NCBI RefSeq assembly: GCF_001194135.2
Contig: NC_068984.1
Coordinates: forward strand, 28,561,821 to 28,625,820
Direction: 5' to 3'
Source: Octopus bimaculoides
Taxonomy: Eukaryota
DNA: 64,000 nt
The translations under genes were made by a program, and so were the position numbers. How positions within the stretch are numbered: the stretch's first letter is position 1; the number at the start of each line of letters is the position of its first letter. The notes beneath the pieces are model-generated. The model had not been told where the DNA came from. It worked only from the letters and a program-made list of their open reading frames with translations, and searched no databases. Of this stretch, positions 21,941-64,000 are shown piece after piece.

Positions 21941-22129
21941 CTGTGTGTGTATAAGGTTAGTAGAGTTAGAGGCTGGAATAACCTTCTGAGGGATAAGAGC
22001 ATCCGTTACACTACCGGTATAATTACCTATGTTAACCCTGGGCATACATATGCAAGCATATTATGCTCAGAGATTACAGGTAATGGCAAAGATAAACAGG
22101 AGTCTATCAGGAATCAAATTTAAAGTAAA

Positions 22130-23069
22130 CAGAAAATGGAGAAATATCGATCTGGCACTTGTGCCCGTGGCATGTGTAATGGACTTTCGAGTGAGATCGT
22201 TGCCAGGGCCCCTGGACTGGCTCTTGTGCGGGTAGCACATAAAATACACCATTTGAGCATGGCTGTTGCCAGTACTGCCTGACTGGCCTTCGTGCAGGTG
22301 GCACGTAAAAGCACCCACTACACTCTCTGAGTGGTTGGCGTTAGGAAGGGCATCCAGCTGTAGAAACTCTGCCAAATCAGATTGGAGCCTGGTGTAGCCA
22401 TCCGGTTTCACCAGTCCTCAGTCAAATCGTCCAACCCATGCTAGCATGGAAAGCAGACGTTAAACGATGATGATGATGATGATGATTGATCAACAACAAT
22501 TGACTTACATCAATTATTATTTTTCAATTCAGTACAAATAGACTGTATCCTAATTAACAGTTGTTTCAACTTCCAATGTTATATAGTATTGCCATTGATA
22601 TTCTAATAATAATATTCATCATATTTGGTAATAAATCTGATCTGGGACATGGAGCTTCATCAGAGTGAAGAAAAATGCATACATAAAAGATAAGAAAGAA
22701 GAAAAGAGCCTCGAGGGGAAAAGGAACGGCTTAATATGTTTAAATCATACCATTTACTCAACATCCCAAAGTGACACAGAAGCAAAATGATATGATTTAA
22801 ACATATTAAGCCTTTCCTTTTCCTCTTGAGACTTCTTCTCTTCTTTCCTTTCTTTTATGTATGTATTTTTCTTCACTGTGATGAAGCTCTGTGTTCCAGA
22901 TCGGCTTTATTACTAAATATGAAATTATTTTTAGAATATCAATGGCAAAACCATACAACATTGGAAGCAGAAACAGCTGTTAGATGGGATACAGTCTATT
23001 TGTATTGAATTAAAAAATAATGATTAATGTAAGTCAATTGTTGTTGATCAACATTTCTCCATTTTCTGT
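22130..23069. repeat. Long foldback (inverted repeat) with ~280-bp arms, left arm interrupted by an RTE 3'UTR
   Basis: 22486-22749 matches the reverse complement of 22791-23051 (roughly 85-90% by eye) around a 41-nt spacer. The outer tip acagaaaatggagaaat (22130-22146) matches atttctccattttctgt (23053-23069) across the RTE insertion. Confidence 0.9.
22153..22486 (+). mobile_element. 5'-truncated RTE 3'UTR with (GAT)n tail inserted in the foldback arm
   Basis: Only a few substitutions versus the 11405-11580 copy. Flanks tcgatc / ttgatc resemble a short target-site duplication of the arm sequence. Confidence 0.9.
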
Positions 23070-24115: not shown

Positions 24116-24169
<54 letters not shown>

Positions 24170-24578
24170 NNNNNNNNNNNNNNNNNNNNNNNNNNNNNNN
24201 NNNNNNNNNNNNNNNNNNNNNNNNNNNNNNNNNNNNNNNNNNNNNNNNNNNNNNNNNNNNNNNNNNNNNNNNNNNNNNNNNNNNNNNNNNNNNNNNNNNN
24301 NNNNNNNNNNNNNNNNNNNNNNNNNNNNNNNNNNNNNNNNNNNNNNNNNNNNNNNNNNNNNNNNNNNNNNNNNNNNNNNNNNNNNNNNNNNNNNNNNNNN
24401 NNNNNNNNNNNNNNNNNNNNNNNNNNNNNNNNNNNNNNNNNNNNNNNNNNNNNNNNNNNNNNNNNNNNNNNNNNNNNNNNNNNNNNNNNNNNNNNNNNNN
24501 NNNNNNNNNNNNNNNNNNNNNNNNNNNNNNNNNNNNNNNNNNNNNNNNNNNNNNNNNNNNNNNNNNNNNNNNNNNNNN
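24170..24578. other. Assembly gap (N run)
   Basis: N characters; flanked by (TA)n and a SINE. Confidence 1.
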
Positions 24579-24722
24579 CTTTCAGTTTCCATCTAGCAAC
24601 TCCACTCACAAGGCTTTGGTCAGCCTGAGGCTATAGTAGAAGACACTTACCCATCGTGCCACGCAGTGGGACTGAACCCGGAAGCATGTGGTTGATAAGC
24701 AAACTACTTACCACACAGCCAC
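24579..24722 (-). mobile_element. 5' part of tRNA-SINE (same family as 23166-23580), cut by the gap
   Basis: ctttcagtttccatctagcaac...gctatagtagaagacacttacccatcgtgccacgcagtgggactgaaccc. Confidence 0.85.
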
Positions 24723-34360: not shown

Positions 34361-34450
34361 AAGAGAGAGAGTGTGTATGTGAGAGAGAGAGTGTGTATGT
34401 GTGAGAGAGAGAGTGTGCGTGTGTGTGAGAGAAAGAGAGAGAGAGAGAAA
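34361..34450. repeat. Compound (GA)n/(GT)n repeat with ~20-bp period just downstream of the Ig exon donor
   Basis: gagagagagtgtgtatgtg(t) repeated about three times. Confidence 0.85.
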
Positions 34451-34471: not shown

Positions 34472-34600
34472 AGAAAACCGTAACTTTGATTACATGGCTG
34501 ACTGCGTTAGCTACCCCGTTGTCTGCAACACACTCATAGAGGCCATTACAGTAACGGGAAATGTTGTGGATCATCAAAACTTCTCCAGTCATGCCTATCC
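34472..34600 (-). CDS. Coding exon: C-terminal half of the same Ig domain (proximal acceptor)
   Basis: 129-nt exon with acceptor tatgttgtgttccag| and donor |gtaagt, phase 1/1. Translates (R)IGMTGEVLMIHNISRYCNGLYECVADNGVANAVSHVIKVTVF, with the G.YEC.A.NG F-strand motif. Joins in frame to 41055-40906 across a ~6.3-kb intron. The L.I.NISRYC..YEC.A.NGV pattern is recalled from mollusc lachesin-like proteins. Confidence 0.9.
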
Positions 34601-34654
34601 CTGGAACACAACATAGAAGACATGTATTCAGGCCCTCTCCAGTCATGCCTATTC
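34601..34654 (-). other. Possible alternative exon extension from a duplicated upstream 3' splice site (+54 nt, +18 aa)
   Basis: Second acceptor ctgactaagtgttgtatattgtattacag|GAATAGGCATGACTGGAGA lies exactly 54 nt upstream of ...ccag|GGATAGGCATGACTGGAGA, in the same phase with no stop. Adds IGMTGEGLNTCLLCCVPG. Confidence 0.5.
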
Positions 34655-35133
34655 CTGTAATACAATATACAACACTTAGTCAGAAACAGAATCACCACAA
34701 ACATCGATACACAAGACGATAACAAAAAAATAACGACAATGAAGAAATTTAAGATCAATAGAACAATATCCCCAGAACAATGTGAAGAAACTATTTGCTT
34801 GAAAAACCGAGGAAAATTTCCTAACAGTACATACACATCATAAAATATCTGATAGAACAATATTGTTAGGTTAATGATTCTATGTTTATTAAAGGAGACA
34901 ACGCTGTCAATTTTACAGTAAGTATTGGTAACTGAAGTCTTACTAAAATAGTGTGAAATTTATAATATAAGATGCTTATATTGTATGCAATCTAACAGTG
35001 ACAGTTGAAGTATTATAGTTAATATTAATGATTTAAGTGTTGCTATTTATGTGTACTGAGGGAAAACAGTGGTGGATGAAGCTCCATGTTTATTACATAG
35101 AAAATGATAAACACTGATATACACACATGCTTT

Positions 35134-35173
<40 letters not shown>

Positions 35174-36894
35174 TATATCTATATATATATATATATATAT
35201 ATATGTAAAGACATGGTTATTAAAAGAGCTTGTAAACACAGAAATGAACATTTATATAAGATCACTTATTGCTGCAATAATATGTGAACATTAAAAAAAA
35301 AAAAAACCACATTGATTGTGATTTCTTATAGAATTAATCCATTTCAGTATTCATTGATAAATTGCGAACAGAACCTCACCTCATTAATATACAAGTGCCA
35401 TGAATCTAAGTTCTATTAACTACAAACTTGCTAATCTTTATCATCTAAGATCAATTTATTTCCACAAGATTCATTCCTATGCTGGTGCATTTCTCAAGAT
35501 ATTCATCATGTGTCTGAAGGTCTGTGAAAATTAATTGAGTTTTATCTACTTATTGCTTCCAAAGGTATAAAAAATGTAAGAAACAAACTCTACTTCTTTT
35601 GATTATGACCTAAGCAATATTTGTATGATCATCTCTATACCAAGTACAATAGTTAACTTACTAGTTTACAATCCAATTTTATAACCCTGGGTGATTTTAC
35701 CCTTTAAGAATTCCATTACATCACTACAGATTACTTCAGATAACAGCAATTCTGCATTATCACTTCTAGAGAATTAATACTTCAACAATCCTATTTTATC
35801 ACCATAGCTGACTTAACAAACCACTAAACTTATTTTATCTCTATATAGTTGGATTTAAAATCTATCAAACCTATTTTAAGACTTATTAATATTCTTAATT
35901 CATGAAAATAGGAAACAACATTTTAAAATCCTAACCTATTATCATAGTTGCATTTACACATCTGACCATATACTCTCATCAAAGCCAACAGCTCAGTTAA
36001 ACGATTCCAGAATATGAAAGCAATGAAAACAAATTCAATTTGAAAGGCATATGATACTGGATATTATAATAATTATTCCTAAATTGCAAAGACAATAAGA
36101 CTGGATAGTTTAGATATCACACACACACGCACACACATATATGATGGACTTTGCTGTTGAAGATGATTTATGAGCATTCAACTTTTGCCAAACGAAATGC
36201 ACAAATGATTTGTTCATAATGATCAAGTGTCCGTGTCACGCATTAACTCACTCTCCCCATCAAGTTGGTGTTGTCTGAACAAGTGCATGGTGTACCACTC
36301 ATCAGGTGTTAAAGTGATTGCAGAGCAACGTAAGATAAAATGTTTTGTTCAAGAACATAAAGCACCACCTGGTCTAGAAATTGAAATCACAATCTAGTGA
36401 TAGTGAGTGCAACACCCTAACCACGAAGCCATGCACCCTCAACACTACAGGCCAATCCCTCACTTATCAATGTGTGGCATTTTCACACACACTGTGAATC
36501 CACCTCATCAAGGAAATGGAAGGAGCAAAGTTTCATGTTCAAACTTAGCATCATGTTACAGACAGGCTTAGATGAAGGTTTTCCATTCAACTCCTACACC
36601 TCCATTTAATTCTTTAAACCCTTTCTTGTATTTCAAATCCCCTCATCTTTTCCTCTTGTCTCACTCGTGAGTTTGCCTGTTTCTCCTCATTCCATTACTT
36701 CTTCCTTCTTCTTTCTTATATTGTTTCTCCTACCACTTCTTGTGGATATGATGCTCACACGATCCTGTTCTTTCTTATCAGTTGTAGCCAATTTTTTTTT
36801 TAACTTAAAAGATGTAAAACTTTGTGGTTTCTCATTAATTTCCCTCTCTTCAACTTTTCCATGTCCAAAATTGAGTTTTTGCTCTTAACTGCAT

Positions 36895-36929
<35 letters not shown>

Positions 36930-36959
36930 TATGTGAAATCCAGGTGCTTACTTCAACCA

Positions 36960-37003
<44 letters not shown>

Positions 37004-37005
37004 AC

Positions 37006-37378
37006 ACAAGGCACAGTGTGGCACCTATGTCTTTTGTTTTTTAACCATCTGGATCTAGGTTCAGTCCCACTGTGTGGCACCTTGGGCAAATCGCTTCTAC
37101 TACAGTCTCAGGCCGACCAAAACCTTGTGAGTGGATTTGTTAGATGGAAACTGAAAGAAGCATGTTGTGTCTATGTTTGTCCCACACCACTACCACCACC
37201 ACTGCTGCTTGACAGCTAGTGCTGGTGTGTTTATGTCCTCTGTTACTTAGCAGTTTGGCCAAAGAGATCAGGCTTAAAAAGAAAATAAGTACTGGAGTTG
37301 ATTAATTCGACTAAAATCTTTCAAAGCAGTACCCCAGCATGGCCCCACAGTCTAATGACCAGAACATGCAAAAGATAA
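37006..37378 (+). mobile_element. tRNA-SINE with CORE-like segment
   Basis: ctaggttcagtcccactgtgtggcaccttgggcaaatcgcttctactacag...gatggaaactgaaagaagc. Confidence 0.8.
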
Positions 37379-37385
37379 ATATATA

Positions 37386-37618
37386 GTGTGACAAGGCTGA
37401 CCATTTGAATTACAGGCACAACAGAAACAGGAAGTAAGAGTGAGAGAAAGTTGTGGTGAAAGAGTACAGCAGGGTTTGCCACCATCCCCTGCCGAAGCCT
37501 TGTGGAGCTTTAGGTGTTTTCGCTCAATAAACACTCACAACGCCTGGTCTGGGAATCGAAACTGTGATCCTATGACCACGAGTCCACTGCCCTAACCACT
37601 GGGCCATTGTGCCTCCAC
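37386..37618 (-). mobile_element. tRNA-derived SINE, resembles the octopus OR-type family
   Basis: Minus strand gtggaggcacaatggcccagtggttagggcagtggactcgtggtcataggatcacagtttcgattcccagacc with clear A and B boxes, followed by non-tRNA body. Family name is from recall. Confidence 0.8.
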
Positions 37619-39265
37619 ATATAATACATAAATATATATACACACACATTTACATAAACATATATATATGTATTGAGAAGAAGCAGGAGACTGCACACAT
37701 GATTGCTCTCTCTCATATGTACATAGAGAAAAAAAGGAGAGAGAAGCCTTGAATATGTGAAACAAATAGTAATAATTTAGTTAAGTGGAAGAGAAACATA
37801 TAAATGAAAAATAGATGAGAGAATGAGAGATGGCGGGGTTGAGATGGAGTGTCAGAAATTTATCAAACTTCAGTAAAATATTTAGTTTTCATAAATGTAT
37901 TTTTTCTCCCTTTATTACAGGATGAATTTGATTTTTATACCTTATCTTTTAATGCCAACATATATGTATTATCATTGATTTTCAATAAACTTTGTATAAA
38001 TGGGAAAATTTTTTGAATATATAGTTCAGTGTTATTTTTGGCTTGTCTGGTCTAATAAATTCTATTGAATAGTAGAAGAGACATATAAAAGAAACAGCAA
38101 TGTAATAACCTTTCACATAAGAATAAATATTACTAACCTAAGGAAAAGTAAAGAAAAATATACAGAAAATTTATTAACAAAAAACAAACAAACTATTAAC
38201 TACCTAACTTTAATAAAATTATGTTACGATAAAATATTTACAAAAACAAATGACATAAAGAATAAAAAAAACTAATGAGGAAATATTTTTTTAAAATATA
38301 CTTTAAAGATCTTTAAATGAGGATTGTAAAAATATATTTAAGAAATTAGTCAATAACAAAAGAAGTGTAAATGGAGAAAAATGCTGGAGATATCTTAAAT
38401 TGAATGTAATAAATGAGATATGCCAAAGGTTTAGCAGGAAATTTTCTCCTTTGCAAGTTAAATATGGAAGAATTATTTTGATAAGAAGGAGGGAAAAAAA
38501 AGAGGTAAAAATAAAAAAAGAGAAAGCCTAAATCCTTGATTTTTCTGATGCCATCCTTTTCCTCCAAATGTCTTTATTTCCTTTTCAATTCTTAAACATT
38601 TTTTTTAAGCAGTTGCATTCTTTTAGCTTTGTGGATATTTCAGAGTTACTGACTACCACTGAGGTTGATGAAATCCCCTTCCTTGAAATTATTATATATA
38701 TTTTATGGAAATAAAATGTAAAATATAATAGATTTCTTGTACAACATTTTAAATTGTAGTTTTAGATTGATTTATGATAATAGTTGTGAGCAAAGAAAGA
38801 AAACCATCACCTACAAATCTATTTTTCTGTAAAAGCTTCACTAGTCACTACTACTTGTGGAGCTTTTCTTTTATATACTTAGTAATAAACCATTTCTAAG
38901 ATAATAATTTCTCTAACATGTAGACTGTTTGAATTTTTGTTAGTATAGCTTTGTGTTATATCAGAAGAAGGTTAGTAAAGAAACAGCAGATTAAATAGGC
39001 TTTATTTATATCTTTTTATTATAGAAGGGTGTGGGGTGTAGTGAGTAGAAGATACTTCAATATACGATTGAAAATTTGGGGGGGGGGTCTGTGTAAAGGA
39101 TAAAGCAAACTTGATACCAGTAGGATTTGAACATAAAGAGATTAAATCAAATATTAATTTAAAACATTGGTAGAAGGTCTCACACTTTTGAGGAGAGATA
39201 GTCCATTGTATCAACTACAATACTTGCTTGGTACTTTATTTTAGTAATTTAGAGGATAGTTAGTA

Positions 39266-39373
39266 CTGATGAACTTGTAGGCCCTCTCAGAATGATGCAA
39301 TTGATATTCAGCTTACATCCAAACTAGCTGAATATCAATTGCATCATTCTGAGAGGGCCTACAAGTTCATCAG
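39266..39373. repeat. Perfect 48-bp inverted repeat with 12-nt spacer
   Basis: ctgatgaacttgtaggccctctcagaatgatgcaattgatattcagct (39266-39313), spacer tacatccaaact, exact reverse complement at 39326-39373; 0 mismatches. Confidence 0.97.
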
Positions 39374-40111
39374 GAAAAACATTGCTGAGAGAAAATTCTA
39401 AAGAGAATCGGTTTTGAGAGGAAGTGTTAGCGGCACGATCTAGTAGTAATGATAATAGAAATAGAAACAAATGCATCTAGTGGGCTTGGTGGAAATGCTG
39501 CACAGTTATTAAGTTGGAGTAAGAGAAAAGTATGAACTAAATGTTGAAAAGTTTAACATGTGATGATATCTATGAGATGCTGGCTTTCTTCTTTTTTCTG
39601 CCCTATCAATACTAATCTGCCTGAAACTATCTCTGTTTTTATGATACAAAACCACCTGTTTTAGAATGTTTACAGTTGAATTAAAACATTCCATAATTTT
39701 ATGTAAGAAACTTTGTGAAATTATATCTTAAGTATGGCATTAATGACAACAAAGTTATTTTCTAAATGATTATTTTCAAATTGAATCAAGAGTTATAGAC
39801 AGTGCCATGTATTTCATTAAGAATATGGTCCTAAGTGAGCTGCCTTAGGGAAATACATAGATAAAATATCATGTAGTGACAGACAGAAACATCTTTGCAT
39901 TTTGTTATTATATATGAACACTATGCTTTGTTATGCCATATTTCTGGAGTTTTACTAAATATACAATGAAATTGTTCAATGACAAATCATATTTCTAGTC
40001 TATTACGAAAAGCTAACATATTTTTATTTCTGCTTTTGAGAAAAATCTGAAATCCTTGCAAATAAATCATTGGTTTGTATATGTGTGTGCTCTCACATGC
40101 ATACACATAAG

Positions 40112-40174
<63 letters not shown>

Positions 40175-40905
40175 TAGAACAGTAATATAGAGTAGAGTAG
40201 TAATATAGTTACATGCAGTTAAATTATATGTCCAATCATAGAGTGGCCAATGGTTTTGCATCTATAAAGTTTAATGCTTTACGTATGCGAAACCATTAGT
40301 CAGTCTATGGCCAGACACATATCTAACTGCATGTAACTATGCACACACACACATACACCATGCCTAGCGTTCTTAACTTGATAGTGTCATTAAGGGTGCA
40401 GATGTGACAAATAGCATGTCATGCATATTTTTAAGCTTGGCAGAATCCATCCCTCTCCACATTTGACCTTAGTAGAGTTTTTTCCAGCCGAGTTAGGAAA
40501 GAGAACAGACCCAAATACTTAACACATTTGTTATTGACTGTGAGAGGATGAAAACCAAGGATTTACACACAGTACTTGTTTTAACATCTCTGCTAATTGG
40601 CTGCTGATACACCCCACCCCACACATAGATACATATATAAATACATATATATATATACATATACACACACACAATATCATATAGCTATATCTATTTGTGA
40701 ATTCAGAGAAATATATACATAACAAACATAAACAAATAAACACACATAATACATATAGACAAACATGTATTATACATATATAACAACTTAATATGTAACC
40801 AGGATTTAGCAAAAAATATAGTTGAAAGATAAATTATATAAAGATATAATATATTGTAGATTATATAAAGTTATTAATACTTAAGAGACATCAAGAAAAT
40901 CTTAC

Positions 40906-41055
40906 TTTCATTTTGCTTTTGGTCGCTTATAGACCTGCGATACCAGGTCACATTAGGATGCGGCGTTCCACTTACATTGCAGACAAGGCTTATTGTATCC
41001 CCCTCTTTTGCAGTTTTATCTTTACTTGACATATCTGCGTTAAGTGTTGGCTGGA
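40906..41055 (-). CDS. Coding exon: N-terminal half of an I-set Ig domain of a lachesin/DIP/IgLON-like cell-adhesion protein
   Basis: 150-nt exon with acceptor tttttttaatttcag| and donor |gtaaga, phase 1 at both ends. Translates (V)QPTLNADMSSKDKTAKEGDTISLVCNVSGTPHPNVTWYRRSISDQKQNE, with the Ig B-strand Cys (LVCNVSG.P.P) and C-strand Trp (VTWY). Confidence 0.9.
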
Positions 41056-41167
41056 CTGAAATTAAAAAAAACAAAAAACAAAGACGAACATTAAAATACT
41101 GGAAAAAAAAAAAAAAAAACTAGCTTAAATTTTAGACAGCTGACCTAAGAAGATAATTCCAAATCCA

Positions 41168-41340
41168 ACATCATTATCGTCACCTTCCATGATGGCATGA
41201 ATTGGATGGTTTGACAGGAGCTGGCCAGGTAGACAACTACACCAGGCTACTGTGTCTGTTTTAGCATGGATTTTTATGGCTGGATGCCCTTCCTAACATC
41301 AACAACCCAGCAGAGTGGACTGAGTGGTTTTAAATCCAAC
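41168..41340 (-). mobile_element. Old RTE-tail fragment
   Basis: catcattatc...ccttccatgatggcatg..ttggatggtttgac...ggctggatgcccttcctaacatcaac. Confidence 0.7.
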
Positions 41341-45789: not shown

Positions 45790-46140
45790 CCTTGCTGGAG
45801 TTTTAATTCAGATTTTGGCCAAGAGAGTTGCTCTACTACACTAACCCACATGTTTGAAGAGTTGAATCCAAGTTTATTCCATAGACATGATACTTCTAAG
45901 GCTTCTTCTCACCCATTCACATCTAGTAACTTTGTGCTTCCCATTAAATAACATTATAATATCTGCTATGTCTTATCCCCCAAACCCCATGCTATATACA
46001 TACCTTGGTTCTTCCGATGAAGAACTGGTTTCCTTTGGAATTCTTCTCTATCAGCCTAGGAGGTCATATAAACATCATGAAAAGCTCTTGTCTCCTCCAA
46101 GTAAATAGTAGTAATTCTCATACATATACAGCAAGTATAA
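45790..46140 (-). mobile_element. Decayed RTE RT fragment
   Basis: Loose similarity to the RTE ELLYADD...TKV region; many stops. Confidence 0.35.
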
Positions 46141-47231
46141 ACTCCTTCAGCATCTCCTTTCATTAGAAGCTTGACTTGCAAGAATCAACAGCTAAATCTC
46201 ACTTAAATTGACCTCATCATAGGATGGGCACAACAGGAAGAACTTTGATCAGAGGTTTGTTCAATCAGAATAGATCTAGGCTAAACCACAATCGCCATCA
46301 CCACCCCACATATTTCACATTACATTTTATTAAAGACTAGAGAAAACGTGTTTGCTGTATGCAGAGAAATGAAATAAAACTTCCTATTTAGATATAAATG
46401 TAAATTTTAACAATGAAACTATTCATCTATTAATGCCTACAATTGGATAAGTAGTATTGAGAATGGCATAATTGAAAAATAATTTGCTGTTTTGATATGC
46501 TATGATTTCTAGTATTCTACCTATTAATGATATTTAACATGTATTACAATACATAATAAAATGACTAAGATATCGTTGCAGTTGTTGAATTCTAAAATAC
46601 CTCCTTTATATTCAAATACACAGTACTTAGGAACATATGTATGCTTCTTAACAAGTGCTAGATAAGATCAAAATAGATGATTCTGATGTGAACTTTAATG
46701 ACTATTTAAAAACAAATAATGTAATTGCTATATTTCATACTTCTAAATGCAAATTTCACAAAAGGAAATATATATTAGTTTCAAGATGAAAATCATAAAT
46801 ATATGCATGCGCGTGCGTGTGTGTGTCTGCATGCGTAAAAGTACAATATAAATGTTTAATGTTGTATTTGTATTAATTATTCTTACACAGTATTTCATAA
46901 ATACAACTTAAGGCAAAATAAGGCAGCAGAACTGTCATTAGAAGCCAAATCTTGCAACTGTTGTATACAAGACAACTATGTTACTGTTACATCAAAGTGT
47001 TCCTGAATAACTTAAAATATTAAATTAGCATTTAGCACTTATAAACAATTCGATGGCTTAACTAAAAGTATTTACCGACTTTTGTACTATAAGAGTACTG
47101 CAAATAATTTTATAAAGTCGTTCAACCACCAGCAGACAATCTGCTCAAACATTGAATTTAGCACAGTCTTTTTTACACACACACACACACACACCTATAA
47201 TTAGCTTTGCAGTCTGCAGCACTATGACTTA

Positions 47232-48751: not shown

Positions 48752-48983
48752 ATCATCATCATCATCATCATCATCGTTTAACGTCCGCTTTCCATGCTAG
48801 CATGGGTTGGACGATTTGACTGAGGACTGGTGAAACCGGATGGCAACACCAGGCTCCAGTCTGATTTGGCAGAGTTTCTACAGCTGGATGCCCTTCCTAA
48901 CGCCAACCACTCAGAGAGTGTAGTGGGTGCTTTTACGTGTCACCCGCACGAAAACGGCCATGCTCGAAATGGTGTCTTTTATG
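48752..48983 (-). mobile_element. Young RTE 3'UTR with tail, running into a gap
   Basis: Reverse complement is identical by eye to 11405-11580 over ~175 bp. Confidence 0.93.
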
Positions 48984-49507
48984 NNNNNNNNNNNNNNNNN
49001 NNNNNNNNNNNNNNNNNNNNNNNNNNNNNNNNNNNNNNNNNNNNNNNNNNNNNNNNNNNNNNNNNNNNNNNNNNNNNNNNNNNNNNNNNNNNNNNNNNNN
49101 NNNNNNNNNNNNNNNNNNNNNNNNNNNNNNNNNNNNNNNNNNNNNNNNNNNNNNNNNNNNNNNNNNNNNNNNNNNNNNNNNNNNNNNNNNNNNNNNNNNN
49201 NNNNNNNNNNNNNNNNNNNNNNNNNNNNNNNNNNNNNNNNNNNNNNNNNNNNNNNNNNNNNNNNNNNNNNNNNNNNNNNNNNNNNNNNNNNNNNNNNNNN
49301 NNNNNNNNNNNNNNNNNNNNNNNNNNNNNNNNNNNNNNNNNNNNNNNNNNNNNNNNNNNNNNNNNNNNNNNNNNNNNNNNNNNNNNNNNNNNNNNNNNNN
49401 NNNNNNNNNNNNNNNNNNNNNNNNNNNNNNNNNNNNNNNNNNNNNNNNNNNNNNNNNNNNNNNNNNNNNNNNNNNNNNNNNNNNNNNNNNNNNNNNNNNN
49501 NNNNNNN
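48984..49507. other. Assembly gap (N run)
   Basis: N characters. Confidence 1.
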
Positions 49508-49719
49508 ATATATATATATATATATATATACACGTACACTCATGTGTATACACATACATATATAGGATGGAGGGTAGGAATGATTAGAAAGAGAAACCTG
49601 CAGATGTTTTCTACTTTGTGTGGCATCATGAAAACAAAATCAAAGAAGAATATAATTTGAAAAGCATATTAGGACACAGAAGAAAAGGCAATTTAAATTT
49701 GGCTCAGTACCTTCAAGAA

Positions 49720-60880: not shown

Positions 60881-63534
60881 AAAATCAACTTAATGAGATT
60901 GGAATAATATTGTAGGGAGATAGCATGCTACTGTTTCTGCCATGTCTACTTAGCTGTCATTAATATCGGTAGCACTAATGATAAGAATAACAACATTCTC
61001 ATAATTAACTATAAGTCATTAGAAAGAGTGGGAGGGATATTTATATTTATGGCATTCACTTTATATCAATCACTACAACCCCTAACTGTCACTGGTACTA
61101 GTTCAAAAACAGCAAGACCATAAACAGCAATAAAAATATTCATATAGCCACACAGTCAGTGATTGTAATCATGAATGCAAACACATGTGCATGCACACGC
61201 ACAGACACACAACTGTATATATATGTGTGTGTATGTGTGCTTATATATGTCTTATATATGTATAAAACACACACAAGCACATATGTACTGATTTTCTTTA
61301 GTTAGACAGTTTTGAAGCTGTCGTTCCAAAAGTTTGGGTTATAAGGGGTGTCTTAAAAGTTAATTGATTCCATTAGCTGGTAAGTGATGACTGACACACA
61401 CTTTAGCACTTCAAAATATGGAAATAAATTTTCATTAGTCAATGATTTATTTACACCAAAGGAAAAATAAAATCCTTATTTAAATGTATTGAACCAAAAT
61501 ATCCTTTGAATAGTAGTAACATTTCAGAAAATTATGCCTGCTTTCAAGTAAAGATTGTGCATAAAAGTGATGACATGTAGTTTGCTGATGACTAGATAAC
61601 ATCAACACAAGCAAAGTAGATACATTTCTTGAAGAATGTGTCATGTCAAAGAACAACATCCATTATACATGTTGTTTTGTATTAGTATATTAAAAAAAAA
61701 CTCAAATACAGATACATTCAAAGTGATTTAAAAAATGTTACCATTTAAGTGCTTACATCTATTTATGGCTATTGTAAAGAAATATTTCTCTGGTAAAGAG
61801 ATTCTTCCTGTCAAAGGGTCTCCTTTAGACAATTGCAGTGTCTTTACATTTCTTTTCTGCTTTGCTTTCTTTTTTGATACAGGTAAGTAGAAAAGGACAC
61901 ACAAAACAAGGTACACAGTTTATAATATTAGTTTAAGGCTAGAAAGAAGTTTGGGGCAGTGGCTCTTCTTCAAAGAAAAGCAAAGAAAATCAGAAATACA
62001 CGTAACAAAAAACAGGAAGAGAAAATAATCCCATTGAACAATATTACAGAATTAGTCAAAGACGCATGGACACGTGTGTGTGTGTGTGTGTGTGTGTATT
62101 TATGTGGGTATGGGGGGGAGTTCAAATAGGTGTATGGGTGTGCATGCATTTCTATATAGAATCAATGGTGAATGGAAGAGAATGGAGAAAATATTAGATT
62201 TCAGTAAAGAGAAGTTTAAAGGGAGACAATGGGTTGGAGTCAGTAGTTATTTAGTAAAGGGAAATATATTTAATGTGGATATAGAACTACAGAAACAGGC
62301 TTAATGTGTATGGTGTACACATGCATGTGCACATAGGGCTGTGTGTAAGGTAGTGTACATATGTATGTATGTGTGTGTGTAAGGCAGTGTACATATGTAT
62401 GTGGGTAATGCAATGTATATTCATAAATGTTGTCTGTATATGCGTTTGTAGGTTTCCTTGAATGTATGTTCTGCAAGTGCACTGCAGTGAATGTGTGCAT
62501 CTTGTGTATGCTGTATTTGTTCAAATAGGTGTGTATGTGTGCATAGGTGTAAATACATGTAGTGTGTTGCTGTGTAATATAGTGGATAGAAATGAGGTGG
62601 TGTGTATATGTAGGAAACAGAAATGTAATAGTGTGTATTTATTGCTGCTATAAGTTGAACATCTTGGCATGTGTATCTGAGTTGTGTAGAAGTATGAATA
62701 TAGATGGATGTAGCAAGAGGAAATCAAAGTGGTTGTTAAGCCCATGTGAGTGAATTGTTTGAAAGTGAAAAATAAGCTGTTAATGTTGTAAGCATGATAT
62801 AGGAAAACCATGGTTGTAGAGGAATACGAATGACAGAGAAGTACCAAGAAGTATAGTTAATGTGTGGAAGTGACAATCTACAAATGTTCCACCTTGAAGG
62901 TGGACCAATCAATTTGTCTCCTTGAGCACCCACACCTACATGCAGCAGGCCTCAACTAGCTTTGTAACAAAAGGTTTAATACAAAATAAACAGTCAGCTT
63001 CAGAACAAGAGATGGTTGCACAGGAGAATTGATCTGTTATGTGGCAGAAGACATTATGTCTTCTTTGGATGGTAGTATTTAGCATGAATGAATAAATATG
63101 GATGTAGAAATAAGAATAGACAAAAAATTCAGGCTGAAAGTGTGGAAAACAGAAGGAATTGCAGACCAGTAAACTGAGATGAAGCATTCAGGTCAGAGAT
63201 AAAAAGTAATGGGAGTCTAAATAGATGAGTTGGAGGTGCAGCAAGATGTTGAACTTGAAAGGTAATACCAGCAGGAAAGAGAAATGAAATGATTGGTGGT
63301 GGGGCAGACACGCGGTAAAAAAGTCAGGTGTAACTGATAAAATATTGCAAACATAGACTTAGATATAATCTTCAAGAGTACTCATGTGATGTGAATCAAC
63401 AGACCATGCATCAAGACAAGGCATCAAAATCAGAATTGTGGCTAATGGCTAAAGACGTGGAGGAATTGGTAAGGAATGGTAAATTTGGTGTGGTGCATTA
63501 TTCCTGAAAAAATGGCTGGATGGTTATTATGACT

Positions 63535-63598
63535 NNNNNNNNNNNNNNNNNNNNNNNNNNNNNNNNNNNNNNNNNNNNNNNNNNNNNNNNNNNNNNNN
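63535..63598. other. Assembly gap with a 53-bp sequence duplicated on both sides
   Basis: 63482-63534 is identical to 63599-63651. Confidence 0.95.
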
Positions 63599-64000
63599 AA
63601 TTTGGTGTGGTGCATTATTCCTGAAAAAATGGCTGGATGGTTATTATGACTTGAATGCCTTTGATGAGACTAATCAATTAGGGCCAATTTAAGAAAACGT
63701 GTAAGCACTGCATGGAGAATTAAGTAAATTAATTATTAGCAAGTTATATGAAATAATATTGCAAATACAAATGATCACAAAATAGGAAGAAATATGTAAA
63801 TGATTTTCTTTCTGACTGATAGGTCAGAAAATGAAGTTTATCTTGTAAGTCTGTTTTAAATCATTTTTGAAATTGATTGATTCTATTCTGACGATTTAAT
63901 AAGTCTTTTATTGTTGGCATACAATAAATGTCGGAATACATTAGACAGTAAAATTCGGAACCCAAAGAAATTATTGAAATGATTATAACTATGAAAAACA

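What the first reader, a model, noticed from the sequence alone, without database searches (positions are those of the whole stretch)
34582..34683. In-frame tandem duplication of an entire 3' splice site in a neural Ig-domain exon
Seen: on the minus strand the branch-point-like motif, U/G-rich tract, AG and first ~19 exonic nt occur twice: ctgactaagtgttgtatattgtattacag|GAATAGGCATGACTGGAGA then ctgaatacatgtcttctatgttgtgttccag|GGATAGGCATGACTGGAGA. The two AGs are exactly 54 nt apart, in the same phase, with no stop. The exon-like parts are 18/19 identical while the intron-like parts have diverged more, including an indel. Inference: both acceptors may be used, giving an isoform with an extra IGMTGEGLNTCLLCCVPG (three extra Cys) in the C-D loop of the Ig domain. 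That could alter homo- or heterophilic binding or allow covalent dimers.
Basis: partly seen in the sequence, partly recalled or inferred. Interest (0 to 1): 0.7.

Follow-up and report, generated by a model that had tools for sequence, protein, structure and literature searches.

The report
Duplicated splice acceptor in octopus lachesin
A 54-base stretch spanning an intron end and exon start was duplicated in tandem in a cephalopod nerve-cell adhesion gene (lachesin), and octopus and cuttlefish relatives still use both copies as splice sites, making protein forms with or without 18 extra amino acids; public annotation already lists both forms.

Summary
On the minus strand, two acceptor-like units lie exactly 54 nt apart, with exon starts at 34654 and 34600. 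Each has a branch-point-like CTGA motif, a U/G-rich tract, CAG|G and ATAGGCATGACTGGAGA.

The window is the Octopus bimaculoides lachesin gene (IgLON family). The two exons here encode its second Ig domain.
- RefSeq lists isoform X1 (with IGMTGEGLNTCLLCCVPG) and X2 (without), differing only by these 18 residues.
- In a cuttlefish-like species, assembled mRNAs exist in both forms. They differ only by the same 54 nt, removed right after the internal ...TTCCAG.
- The spacing is 54 nt in octopus and in two decapodiform-clade species, with 50/54 bases identical.
- The whole exon shows very low synonymous change.
- An intronless Argonauta retrocopy preserves the long form.

The long form predominates among assembled contigs (32 versus 4).

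Effects on binding or dimerisation are untested. The family's known binding face is on Ig1, not Ig2.

The isoforms themselves are already annotated. Five literature searches found no description of their origin by duplication of a 3' splice site or of their conservation across coleoids. Interest is moderate.

The parts
40906..41055 (-). Exon encoding the N-terminal half of Ig domain 2 of lachesin (..QPTLNADMSSKDKTAKEGDTISLVCNVSGTPHPNVTWYRRSISDQKQNE + 1 nt). It ends in phase 1 and is followed by the donor gtaag at 40905-40901.
   Evidence: Sequence. 100% tblastn match. Identical to RefSeq XP_052822954.1/956.1. Pfam I-set/Ig_3 when joined to the next exon.
34655..40905 (-). Intron removed in the long isoform (6251 nt). 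The short isoform removes 34601-40905 instead.
   Evidence: Exon junctions inferred from RefSeq X1/X2 protein sequences and from the alignment of transcript L003 to window 34651..34472.
34636..34683 (-). Repeat copy A, the upstream 3' splice site. It comprises CTGAC (branch-point consensus, A at 34680, 25 nt from the AG), the U/G-rich tract GUGUUGUAUAUUGUAUUA (10/20 pyrimidines), CAG at 34657-34655, then GAATAGGCATGACTGGAGA. Use of this site gives the long isoform.
   Evidence: Use shown by RefSeq X1 and by long transcripts in other species.
34632..34635 (-). GGGC, the 4-nt junction between the two repeat copies. It has no counterpart at the matching position after copy B (AGTT), so it is either filler from the duplication event or diverged sequence.
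   Evidence: Direct reading and alignment.
34582..34631 (-). Repeat copy B, the downstream (internal) 3' splice site. It comprises CTGAA (degenerate branch-point-like motif), the tract AUGUCUUCUAUGUUGUGUUC (14/20 pyrimidines), CAG at 34603-34601, then GGATAGGCATGACTGGAGA. There is an AG-free zone of 33 nt upstream of the AG. Use of this site gives the short isoform. In the long isoform the same bases encode LNTCLLCCVPG.
   Evidence: Use shown by RefSeq X2 and by short transcript L005. 30/31 bases identical to decapodiform-clade transcripts.
34601..34654 (-). The 54-nt alternative segment. It is exonic in the long isoform (adds IGMTGEGLNTCLLCCVPG) and intronic in the short one. It is in frame and free of stops, and the junction codon is Arg with either acceptor (A|GA or A|GG).
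   Evidence: 50/54 bases identical to L003 and L006. No synonymous change between the two decapodiform-clade species.
34472..34600 (-). Constitutive core of the exon. It encodes the C-terminal half of Ig domain 2 (IGMTGEVLMIHNISRYCNGLYECVADNGVANAVSHVIKVTVF + 1 nt). The donor GTAAGT lies at 34471-34466.

Best explanation
The window holds two exons of the Octopus bimaculoides lachesin gene. This is a three-Ig-domain neural adhesion molecule of the IgLON family with a predicted GPI anchor. The two exons together encode Ig domain 2.

Origin (inferred). In an ancestor of octopuses and cuttlefish/squid, about 50 nt were duplicated in tandem, with 4 nt of junction sequence. The duplicated stretch spanned the end of the intron (branch point, pyrimidine-rich tract, CAG) and the first 19 nt of the exon. 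This left two complete 3' splice sites 54 nt apart in the same reading frame.

Use of both sites (shown).
- Splicing the donor at 40906 to the upstream site (34654) keeps the downstream copy inside the exon. Its former splice signals are then translated as GLNTCLLCCVPG, preceded by a second IGMTGE. This is the long isoform.
- Splicing to the downstream site (34600) gives the short isoform.
- The same segment therefore serves as coding sequence in one isoform and as splice signal in the other.

Which form is commoner (inferred). The long form is the commoner one among assembled mRNA contigs.

Possible reasons for conservation (inferred). The dual role, perhaps together with other RNA-level constraints on this exon, would explain why the bases, including silent codon positions, have hardly changed between octopus and decapodiform relatives.

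Not known:
- What decides which site is chosen in a given cell. Competition between a good branch point with a weak tract upstream and a weak branch point with a better tract downstream is likely, probably modulated by U/G-binding factors.
- What the 18 residues do to the protein.
For: Repeat anatomy and significance.

Gene identity: the window's exons are 100% identical to RefSeq lachesin X1/X2 of O. bimaculoides. The domain type is I-set/Ig_3. Full-length orthologues have a signal peptide, three Ig domains with pLDDT above 90, and a C-terminal hydrophobic helix.

Both sites used:
- RefSeq X1 vs X2, and the older X1/X2 pair, differ by exactly the 18 aa.
- Transcript contigs L006/L007 (long) and L005 (short) show 0-1 mismatch over about 2 kb. 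Their single 54-nt difference ends after TTCCAG.
- The copies share only 11 exact bases in that species. I infer that repeat collapse during assembly is therefore an unlikely explanation for the short contig.

Age and conservation:
- The long form occurs in O. vulgaris, O. sinensis, Acanthosepion pharaonis and a second decapodiform-clade species.
- Spacing is 54 nt in all of them.
- 50/54 bases are identical between octopus and decapodiform-clade transcripts, against only 95/150 in the preceding exon.
- Fraction of amino-acid-identical codons with a silent change between the two decapodiform-clade species: 0/19 in the insert, 3/41 in the exon core, 0.28-0.33 elsewhere (p = 1e-5).
- Octopus vs L003: 2/16 in the insert and 9/39 in the core, against 24/36 in the preceding exon (p = 6e-4 and 2e-4).

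Independent fossil: the intronless Argonauta copy (L008) carries the full-length insert.

Contig counts: 32 long vs 4 short.
Against: - No read-level junction counts for O. bimaculoides could be obtained. For this species, use of both sites rests on RefSeq's automatic isoform models.
- The short form is rare among assembled contigs (4 of 36) and was seen in only one of the two decapodiform-clade species. It could be low-level by-product splicing.
- Low silent-site change covers the whole 183-nt exon, not only the internal splice signal, so it cannot be attributed specifically to the second acceptor.
- Orthologous genomic DNA could not be fetched because the genes are too long. Whether the intronic half of copy A is conserved elsewhere is therefore unknown, and the date of the duplication rests on transcripts and proteins.
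- No Nautilus or other outgroup orthologue was available to show the single-copy ancestral state.
- The downstream site lacks a strict yUnAy branch-point match.
Confidence: 0.85

Rival explanations
1. Only the upstream acceptor matters. The internal CAG is a cryptic site used at noise level, and the short isoform has no function. On this view the 54 nt are conserved simply because they are coding sequence in a constrained exon.
For: Short contigs are 4 of 36 and come from one species cluster only. The internal site has no strict branch-point consensus. The silent-site trough extends over the whole exon, not just the signal.
Against: The short form is annotated in two independent RefSeq releases for O. 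bimaculoides and was assembled from RNA of a cuttlefish-like species. That places it in both coleoid lineages. Ordinary protein-level constraint does not freeze silent positions: 0/19 in the insert vs about 0.3 elsewhere. In the Argonauta retrocopy, which no longer needs to be spliced, exactly the pyrimidine-tract part has drifted.
Confidence: 0.15
2. The extreme base-level conservation of this exon is imposed by RNA editing, that is, by double-stranded structures needed by ADAR in coleoid neural transcripts, rather than by the second splice site. This rival concerns the cause of conservation and can coexist with dual acceptor use.
For: Transcript-derived proteins of the same species cluster differ by K/R, D/G, N/S and I/V, which are the changes A-to-G recoding produces. 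One of them lies in this exon: NISRYCN[D/G]MYEC. Conservation around editing sites in coleoids is established knowledge, recalled from Liscovitch-Brauer et al. 2017 and not read here.
Against: The local pre-mRNA (241 nt) folds no better than shuffles, z = -0.88. The three contigs compared at base level show no A/G differences. Editing was not measured.
Confidence: 0.3
3. The 18 residues descend from an older molluscan insert at this intron position, not from a duplication of the splice site. The resemblance to the intron end would then be secondary.
For: The same intron position carries alternative inserts in many molluscan IgLON genes. Examples are gastropod SEFCPGTN and bivalve cassettes with C.YT. 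Gastropod 'CPG' resembles 'CVPG'.
Against: The insert repeats IGMTGE and its DNA (17/17 bases). The sequence upstream of copy A's AG matches the inside of the insert far better than chance. This is the signature of a tandem duplication across the boundary. Inserts in other molluscs show no such internal repeat.
Confidence: 0.07
4. Assembly artefact or chance similarity.
For: The window has several N gaps and many simple repeats.
Against: The copies differ at 7 positions plus 2 indels. The arrangement is present in mRNA and in annotation of at least five other species. Shuffles never reach the observed score.
Confidence: 0.01

Closest known systems
Alternative 3' splice sites (competing acceptors on one exon), including 'tandem acceptors' such as NAGNAG
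   Same: One donor and two AGs used, with the downstream exon lengthened or shortened in frame. The choice probably depends on competition between branch point, pyrimidine tract and AG context. The scanning and competition rules are recalled from Smith et al. 1993 and Chua & Reed 2001, not read here.
   Different: The sites are 54 nt apart, not 3. Each site has its own copy of the whole signal, and the two are demonstrably copies of each other.
Human F7 intron 7 minisatellite, whose 37-bp repeat spans the exon 7 / intron boundary and multiplies the 5' splice site (PMC1557585)
   Same: A tandem repeat across an exon-intron boundary creates several identical splice sites in a row.
   Different: That case involves donor sites, in a polymorphic human minisatellite, where normally one copy is chosen. 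Here an acceptor is duplicated once, is fixed, and has been kept with both copies in use in both coleoid lineages.
Introns and novel intron positions created by tandem duplication of a sequence containing splice signals (Hellsten et al. 2011, PMC3265369; Lehmann et al. 2010, PMC2891723)
   Same: A short tandem genomic duplication supplies ready-made splice signals. Lehmann et al. note that duplications in multiples of three allow alternative patterns to persist.
   Different: Those cases create a new intron between duplicated AG|GT proto-splice sites inside coding sequence. Here an existing intron's 3' end was duplicated, creating an alternative exon extension rather than a new intron.
HEXB duplication across the intron 13 / exon 14 boundary (Dlott et al. 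1990; recalled from memory, not retrieved)
   Same: A small duplication straddling a 3' splice site leads to use of the upstream copy and an in-frame insertion in the protein.
   Different: That is a rare human disease allele, not an ancient, conserved, dual-use arrangement.
IgLON / lachesin / DIP-Dpr ('Wirin') family of neuronal Ig adhesion molecules (PMC10084454)
   Same: Three Ig domains, signal peptide and C-terminal hydrophobic tail. The closest named relatives are lachesin, LSAMP and OPCML.
   Different: To my knowledge, vertebrate IgLON isoform variation lies at the promoters and near the GPI site. Here, and in many molluscs, it lies inside Ig2 at a phase-1 intron.

Membership tests
IgLON / lachesin family (the gene) | Three extracellular Ig (I-set/V-like) domains | tested here: met
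   The window itself holds only Ig2 (Pfam I-set 2.4e-13, Ig_3 1.1e-14). The identical RefSeq protein and full-length orthologues have three Ig domains. The AF2 model has three beta-sandwich domains with pLDDT above 90.
IgLON / lachesin family (the gene) | Signal peptide and C-terminal hydrophobic GPI-attachment signal | tested here: inconclusive
   Orthologue P0104 has an N-terminal helix (residues 2-13) and a C-terminal helix (417-437) with a disordered linker. No GPI predictor was run.
IgLON / lachesin family (the gene) | Closest named relatives belong to the family | tested here: met
   Sources name the hits lachesin, LSAMP, OPCML homologue, HNT and amalgam-like. PDB hits include neurotrimin, OPCML and NEGR1.
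IgLON / lachesin family (the gene) | Homo/heterophilic dimerisation through Ig1 | not testable with these tools
   Needs binding assays or structures.
Alternative 3' splice site pair | The same donor is joined to two different AGs in real mRNA | tested here: met
   Cuttlefish-like species: L006/L007 vs L005. O. bimaculoides: RefSeq X1 vs X2 protein models only. No read counts were available.
Alternative 3' splice site pair | Each AG is preceded by a usable branch point and pyrimidine tract | tested here: inconclusive
   Upstream site: CTGAC at -25 but only 10/20 pyrimidines. Downstream site: 14/20 pyrimidines and a 33-nt AG-free zone, but only CTGAA and no yUnAy match. No trained splice-site model for cephalopods was available.
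Alternative 3' splice site pair | Regulated (tissue- or stage-specific) use | not testable with these tools
   Needs RNA-seq junction counts per tissue.
Splice site created by tandem genomic duplication | Direct repeat spanning the intron-exon boundary, with both the intronic and exonic halves similar beyond chance | tested here: met
   (intronic half alone: 0/5000 shuffles reach the observed score).
Splice site created by tandem genomic duplication | Single-copy state in an outgroup | tested here: inconclusive
   Other molluscan IgLON genes have a single [IV]G..GE and no internal repeat. However, they are paralogues or of uncertain orthology, and no Nautilus sequence was available.
NAGNAG / wobble tandem acceptors | Acceptor AGs 3 nt apart sharing one branch point and tract | tested here: not met
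   The distance is 54 nt and each AG has its own signal copy.
Processed retrogene (Argonauta copy, L008) | Uninterrupted ORF where the parent gene has introns | tested here: met
   402 aa in 1209 contiguous nt. The alignment to the window's two exons runs across the junction without a gap for the intron. Parent genes span 115-265 kb.
Processed retrogene (Argonauta copy, L008) | Poly(A) remnant and target-site duplications | tested here: inconclusive
   No clear poly(A) or flanking repeat was seen by eye in the 500-nt flanks. The copy is old (52-60% protein identity to lachesin orthologues).

The most novel reading that the evidence does not exclude
The Ig2 intron position is an ancient isoform switch in molluscan IgLON adhesion molecules, and the switch toggles a disulfide.

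- Every one of the 122 Ig2 domains examined carries an extra Cys in the E-F loop (RYC).
- Nearly all inserted segments bring an odd number of Cys: one in bivalve and gastropod cassettes, three in the cephalopod insert, and one retained in the Argonauta retrocopy.
- The total is therefore even only when an insert is present.

On this reading, cephalopods rebuilt the switch from a duplicated splice acceptor, turning a pyrimidine tract into a Cys-bearing loop. The long/short choice would then set whether Ig2 carries a free thiol or an extra disulfide-stapled loop, with consequences for cis-interactions or stability at synapses.
Probability: 0.2. Interest if true: 0.65.

Novelty: new member of a known kind. 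Interest (0 to 1): 0.45.

Why it matters
This is a clean, datable natural example of how alternative splicing can arise in one step. A short tandem duplication across an intron-exon boundary gives two ready-made acceptors in frame.

Both copies have been kept in both coleoid lineages. One copy's branch-point region, pyrimidine tract and AG serve as codons (GLNTCLLCCVPG) in the major isoform. That makes it a useful case for studying sequence under simultaneous coding and splicing constraint, and the intronless Argonauta retrocopy acts as a built-in control in which the splicing constraint has been lifted.

For cephalopod neurobiology, it flags a conserved isoform pair in a neural adhesion molecule of the IgLON family. 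More broadly, it flags an Ig2 insertion hot spot across molluscs.

It does not change any general principle. The isoforms themselves are already in RefSeq.

Tried and rejected
1. The first protein search, using the two-exon domain, returned only an old 108-aa gene model that uses the downstream site, plus two read-through ORFs from another species. This briefly suggested that the upstream copy was a dead pseudo-acceptor. The exhaustive representative search overturned that. The word-index search had missed all the orthologues.
2. The out-of-frame 104-aa ORF across the duplication was used as bait for genomic contigs of related octopuses. Nothing was found.
3. I looked for exon 2 in the 16.5-kb cuttlefish-like genomic contig L001. 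It is not within 10 kb of exon 1, and the introns do not align with the window.
4. Fetching orthologous genomic DNA failed for A. pharaonis, O. sinensis (two models) and Argonauta. The intronic half of copy A could therefore not be compared between species.
5. Other Ig exons of the gene were sought in the window by motif scan and tblastn. None were found, so Ig1 and Ig3 lie outside the 64 kb. A motif hit at 46125-46151 was inspected and lacks splice sites.
6. A local pre-mRNA structure that might hide one acceptor was sought. None was better than shuffles.
7. AlphaFold2 on the long isoform left the insert unresolved at pLDDT below 50, so it cannot be placed in the C'-D or the D-E loop.
8. Literature searches found no description of this case, and the sequencing run accessions are not mentioned in any held paper.
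9. Pfam on five repeat-element ORFs elsewhere in the window gave no hits.
10. The difference between 18/19 (exon-like) and 23/31 (intron-like) identity was considered as evidence of selection on copy A. It was rejected as too small a sample.
Full report
**1. The observation**

Read on the minus strand, the region is:
- ...ctgactaagtgttgtatattgtattacag|GAATAGGCATGACTGGAGA
- GGGC
- ctgaatacatgtcttctatgttgtgttccag|GGATAGGCATGACTGGAGA AGTTTTG...

The first AG ends at 34655 and the second at 34601, so the two exon-like starts (34654 and 34600) are 54 nt apart. The frame is open across the 54 nt.

The repeat is not a chance match:
- The 17-mer ATAGGCATGACTGGAGA occurs only at these two places in 64 kb. 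None is expected in shuffles, even with two mismatches allowed.
- The repeat finder gives a 40-nt ungapped pair at 85% identity with spacing 54.
- A gapped alignment of 48 vs 50 nt has 41 matches and scores 51, against 14.2 +/- 2.3 for shuffles.
- The intron-like half alone is also significant once the CAG and the exon-like part are stripped. It scores 10 against -3.2 +/- 3.0, with 0 of 5000 shuffles reaching it. The next best of 271 CAGG-preceding segments of the window scores 3.

What was duplicated is therefore the whole 3' splice site region, not merely a coding motif. Tandem Repeats Finder did not report it, since there are only two diverged copies.

**2. What gene this is**

The upstream exon (41055..40906, donor gtaag at 40905) and the exon starting at 34600 or 34654 and ending at 34472 (donor GTAAGT) together encode one Ig domain. 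Pfam gives I-set 2.4e-13 and Ig_3 1.1e-14. The best solved relatives are Ig domains of Dscam, neurofascin, Robo, contactins and the IgLONs neurotrimin, OPCML and NEGR1.

The spliced sequence is 100% identical to RefSeq 'lachesin' of Octopus bimaculoides (XP_052822954.1/955.1/956.1). O. vulgaris differs at two residues in the first exon. The window is therefore O. bimaculoides.

Full-length orthologues have a signal peptide, three Ig domains, a disordered stalk and a C-terminal hydrophobic helix. This is the IgLON/lachesin architecture.

No other exon of the gene lies in the window. Orthologous genes span 115-265 kb.

**3. Are both acceptors used?**

The first, word-indexed protein search found only an old 108-aa model that uses the downstream site. 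The exhaustive search then found a 438-aa protein from an mRNA contig of another species that contains the insert. A profile search followed by cluster listing gave the full picture:
- O. bimaculoides X1 (351 aa) reads NERIGMTGEGLNTCLLCCVPGIGMTGEVLMIHN, and X2 (333 aa) reads NERIGMTGEVLMIHN.
- The earlier annotation release has the same pair (XP_014789334.1 and XP_014789335.1).
- O. vulgaris (CAI9720776.1), O. sinensis (XP_029657685.2/686.1) and the cuttlefish Acanthosepion pharaonis (CAE1244120.1) are annotated in the long form.
- The Argonauta hians orthologue model is short.

At base level, three mRNA contigs come from one cuttlefish-like species. Their first-exon protein is identical to that of A. 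pharaonis, and they show 0-1 mismatch over about 2 kb. They differ only by 54 nt that are present in L006/L007 and absent in L005. The deletion starts at the end of the upstream exon and ends directly after ...GTTGTGTTCCAG. In that species the two repeat copies share only 11 exact bases, so I infer that the short contig is unlikely to be an assembly collapse.

Counting contigs per protein, long forms are carried by 32 contigs and short forms by 4. This is a rough proxy, but it shows that the long form is not a minor by-product.

**4. Age and constraint**

The insert is 18 residues in octopuses and in two decapodiform-clade species: IGMTGEGLNTCLLCCVPG vs VGMTGDGLNTCVLCCVPG.

Between the window and transcript L003, differences are 53/147 nt in the preceding exon, 6/57 across the junction codon plus insert, and 13/126 in the exon core. 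Within the 54 nt, 50 bases are identical. The former splice signal CTGAATACATGT[C/G]TTCTATGTTGTGTTCCAG is 30/31 identical.

Silent change was measured as the fraction of amino-acid-identical codons that carry a silent difference.

| Comparison | Preceding exon | Insert | Exon core | Rest of coding sequence | Significance |
|---|---|---|---|---|---|
| L003 vs L006 (two decapodiform-clade species) | 13/46 (0.28) | 0/19 | 3/41 | 0.28-0.33 | p = 1e-5 for the whole exon vs the rest |
| Octopus window vs L003 | 24/36 | 2/16 | 9/39 | not measured | p = 6e-4 (insert) and 2e-4 (core) vs the preceding exon |

The arrangement therefore predates the octopus-cuttlefish split, and the entire alternative exon is under base-level constraint beyond protein coding.

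The junction codon is Arg with either acceptor in both lineages: A|GA and A|GG in octopus, C|GG and C|GA in the others.

**5. An independent fossil**

A second Argonauta 'lachesin-like' protein (GAB1600296.1) is encoded by a single uninterrupted 1209-nt ORF (L008). It is closest to the lachesin orthologues (60% to Argonauta's own, against 40-43% to other IgLON paralogues).

It contains the insert at full length (...IGMTEEDQDTPNQYCVPERGIAGE...), so it is a processed copy of a long-isoform mRNA. This copy no longer has to be spliced, and it is precisely the pyrimidine-tract part that has drifted. Two of the three Cys are gone, while CVP and the flanks remain. This fits the view that the tract's conservation in the parent gene owes something to its splicing role.

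**6. Mechanism**

*Shown.* Two competing 3' splice sites exist and both are used.

*Sequence features.*

| Site | Branch-point motif | Pyrimidines at -23..-4 | Other |
|---|---|---|---|
| Upstream (34654) | Consensus CTGAC, 25 nt from its AG | 10/20 (poor tract) | |
| Downstream (34600) | Only CTGAA, no yUnAy match | 14/20 (better tract) | 33-nt AG-free zone |

*Inferred.* The balance between a good branch point with a weak tract and the reverse arrangement makes the choice tunable. U/G-rich elements in both tracts are plausible binding sites for regulators. No local RNA structure stands out (z = -0.88).

*Protein consequence.* The insert sits between the C strand and the E strand of Ig2 and duplicates the D-strand sequence. 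AlphaFold2 models the three domains confidently but leaves residues 184-194 and 200-202 of the insert below pLDDT 50. Whether it extends the C'-D or the D-E connection is therefore open. IgLON/DIP/Dpr proteins bind through Ig1 (PMC10084454), so a direct effect on the known interface is not expected.

**7. Wider context seen on the way**

The same phase-1 intron position in Ig2 carries alternative inserts in annotated isoforms of many molluscan IgLON genes. These include oyster, mussel and clam cassettes with a C.YT motif, gastropod SEFCPGTN, and a 27-residue insert in an O. sinensis LSAMP model.

All 122 Ig2 domains examined have an extra Cys in the E-F loop. Among inserts, 34 have one Cys, 18 have three and 6 have none, while short forms have none. 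The Cys count is thus even mostly when an insert is present. That suggests, but does not show, a disulfide between insert and E-F loop.

**8. Comparison with what is known, and novelty**

Alternative 3' splice sites are commonplace. Splice signals multiplied by tandem duplication are also known:
- the F7 intron 7 minisatellite for donor sites (PMC1557585);
- introns born from duplications (PMC3265369, PMC2891723);
- a HEXB disease allele (recalled from memory, not retrieved).

This is a new member of that kind. An acceptor was duplicated once, and both copies have been retained and used in both coleoid lineages, with one copy's signals translated.

The isoforms themselves are already in RefSeq. 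Five literature searches found no description of their origin or conservation.

**9. Limits**

- No read-level junction counts were available.
- No orthologous genomic DNA was available for the intron end.
- No outgroup was available.
- Species identity of the mRNA runs is inferred only from similarity (SRR27666068/77, SRR20545811, SRR25158137/48).

Noticed in passing
L008 501-1709 (Argonauta hians BAAFZT010000015.1:824216-825424): An intronless 402-aa copy of lachesin, annotated 'lachesin-like' GAB1600296.1. It lies within the range of another gene on the opposite strand and has an intact ORF. It is a processed retrocopy of the long isoform. Whether it is expressed or functional is unknown.
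   Followed up: partly
window 34472-34654 (-), compared with L003 and L006: The whole 183-nt exon is a trough of silent-site change. Between two decapodiform-clade species, 3/60 codons changed silently, against about 0.3 elsewhere. The constraint therefore extends well beyond the internal splice signal, and its cause (splicing enhancers, RNA editing structure, or something else) is not settled.
   Followed up: partly
proteins P0156, P0276, P0281, P0282, P0285, P0287 (transcript contigs of one species cluster); P0270/P0271 (O. sinensis): Transcript-derived proteins of one species cluster differ by K/R (SSKDK/SSKDR, TAKEG/TAREG), D/G (RYCN[D/G]MYEC), N/S (VIE[N/S]SNNG) and I/V (HVIKV/HVVKV). All of these are changes an A-to-G substitution produces, as expected from A-to-I RNA editing in cephalopod neural mRNA. 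O. sinensis has a genomically annotated H-to-R change (MIRNIS) in the same exon.
   Followed up: no
proteins P0104, P0153, P0154, P0155, P0280, P0289 (decapodiform-clade lachesin transcripts): The same gene shows at least two more alternative segments in assembled mRNAs. One is an N-terminal region in several combinations (KSMILQKN / VTGRSSSDDG / GEYRQSPNFQ present or absent). The other is a 5-residue insert in Ig1 (NPNLM or EKKLM after ...KSHK).
   Followed up: no
homologues (e.g. P0177 vs P0205, P0203/P0188/P0197/P0224, P0183 vs P0191, P0166 vs P0176): The Ig2 intron position used here is a hot spot for alternative inserts in annotated IgLON isoforms of oysters, mussels, clams, gastropods and another octopus paralogue. 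Every Ig2 examined has an extra E-F-loop Cys, and most inserts carry an odd number of Cys.
   Followed up: partly
window 41145-41190 (-): The old 108-aa gene model (P0001) starts with an ATG exon here (MEGDDNDVGFGIIFL, donor gt at 41144). Current RefSeq models instead join the Ig2 exon to an Ig1 exon outside the window (...KINKVNLFVL|VQPTL). This first exon is therefore probably a prediction artefact.
   Followed up: partly
window 34362-34448: A compound (AG)n/(TG)n microsatellite with a period of about 20-22 and 3.5 copies. It starts 24 nt downstream of the exon's donor site.
   Followed up: no
window 22067-22411 (-) and 48830-48990 (+); N runs near 24120-24590, 48990-49530, about 60100 and about 63450-63600: The same ORF-like sequence (MKPDGYTRLQSDLAEFLQLDALPNANHSESVVGAFTCH...) occurs twice in opposite orientation, so it is an interspersed repeat. 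It gave no Pfam hit. The window also contains several assembly gaps.
   Followed up: partly
L001 6112-6258 and L002 504-650: Genomic contigs labelled as a metagenome assembly (ENA ERZ21867824) and a Logan run (ERR14857108) carry the cuttlefish-type first Ig2 exon, so they are host cephalopod DNA. In L001 the following intron is longer than 10 kb, against 6.3 kb in the octopus window.
   Followed up: partly
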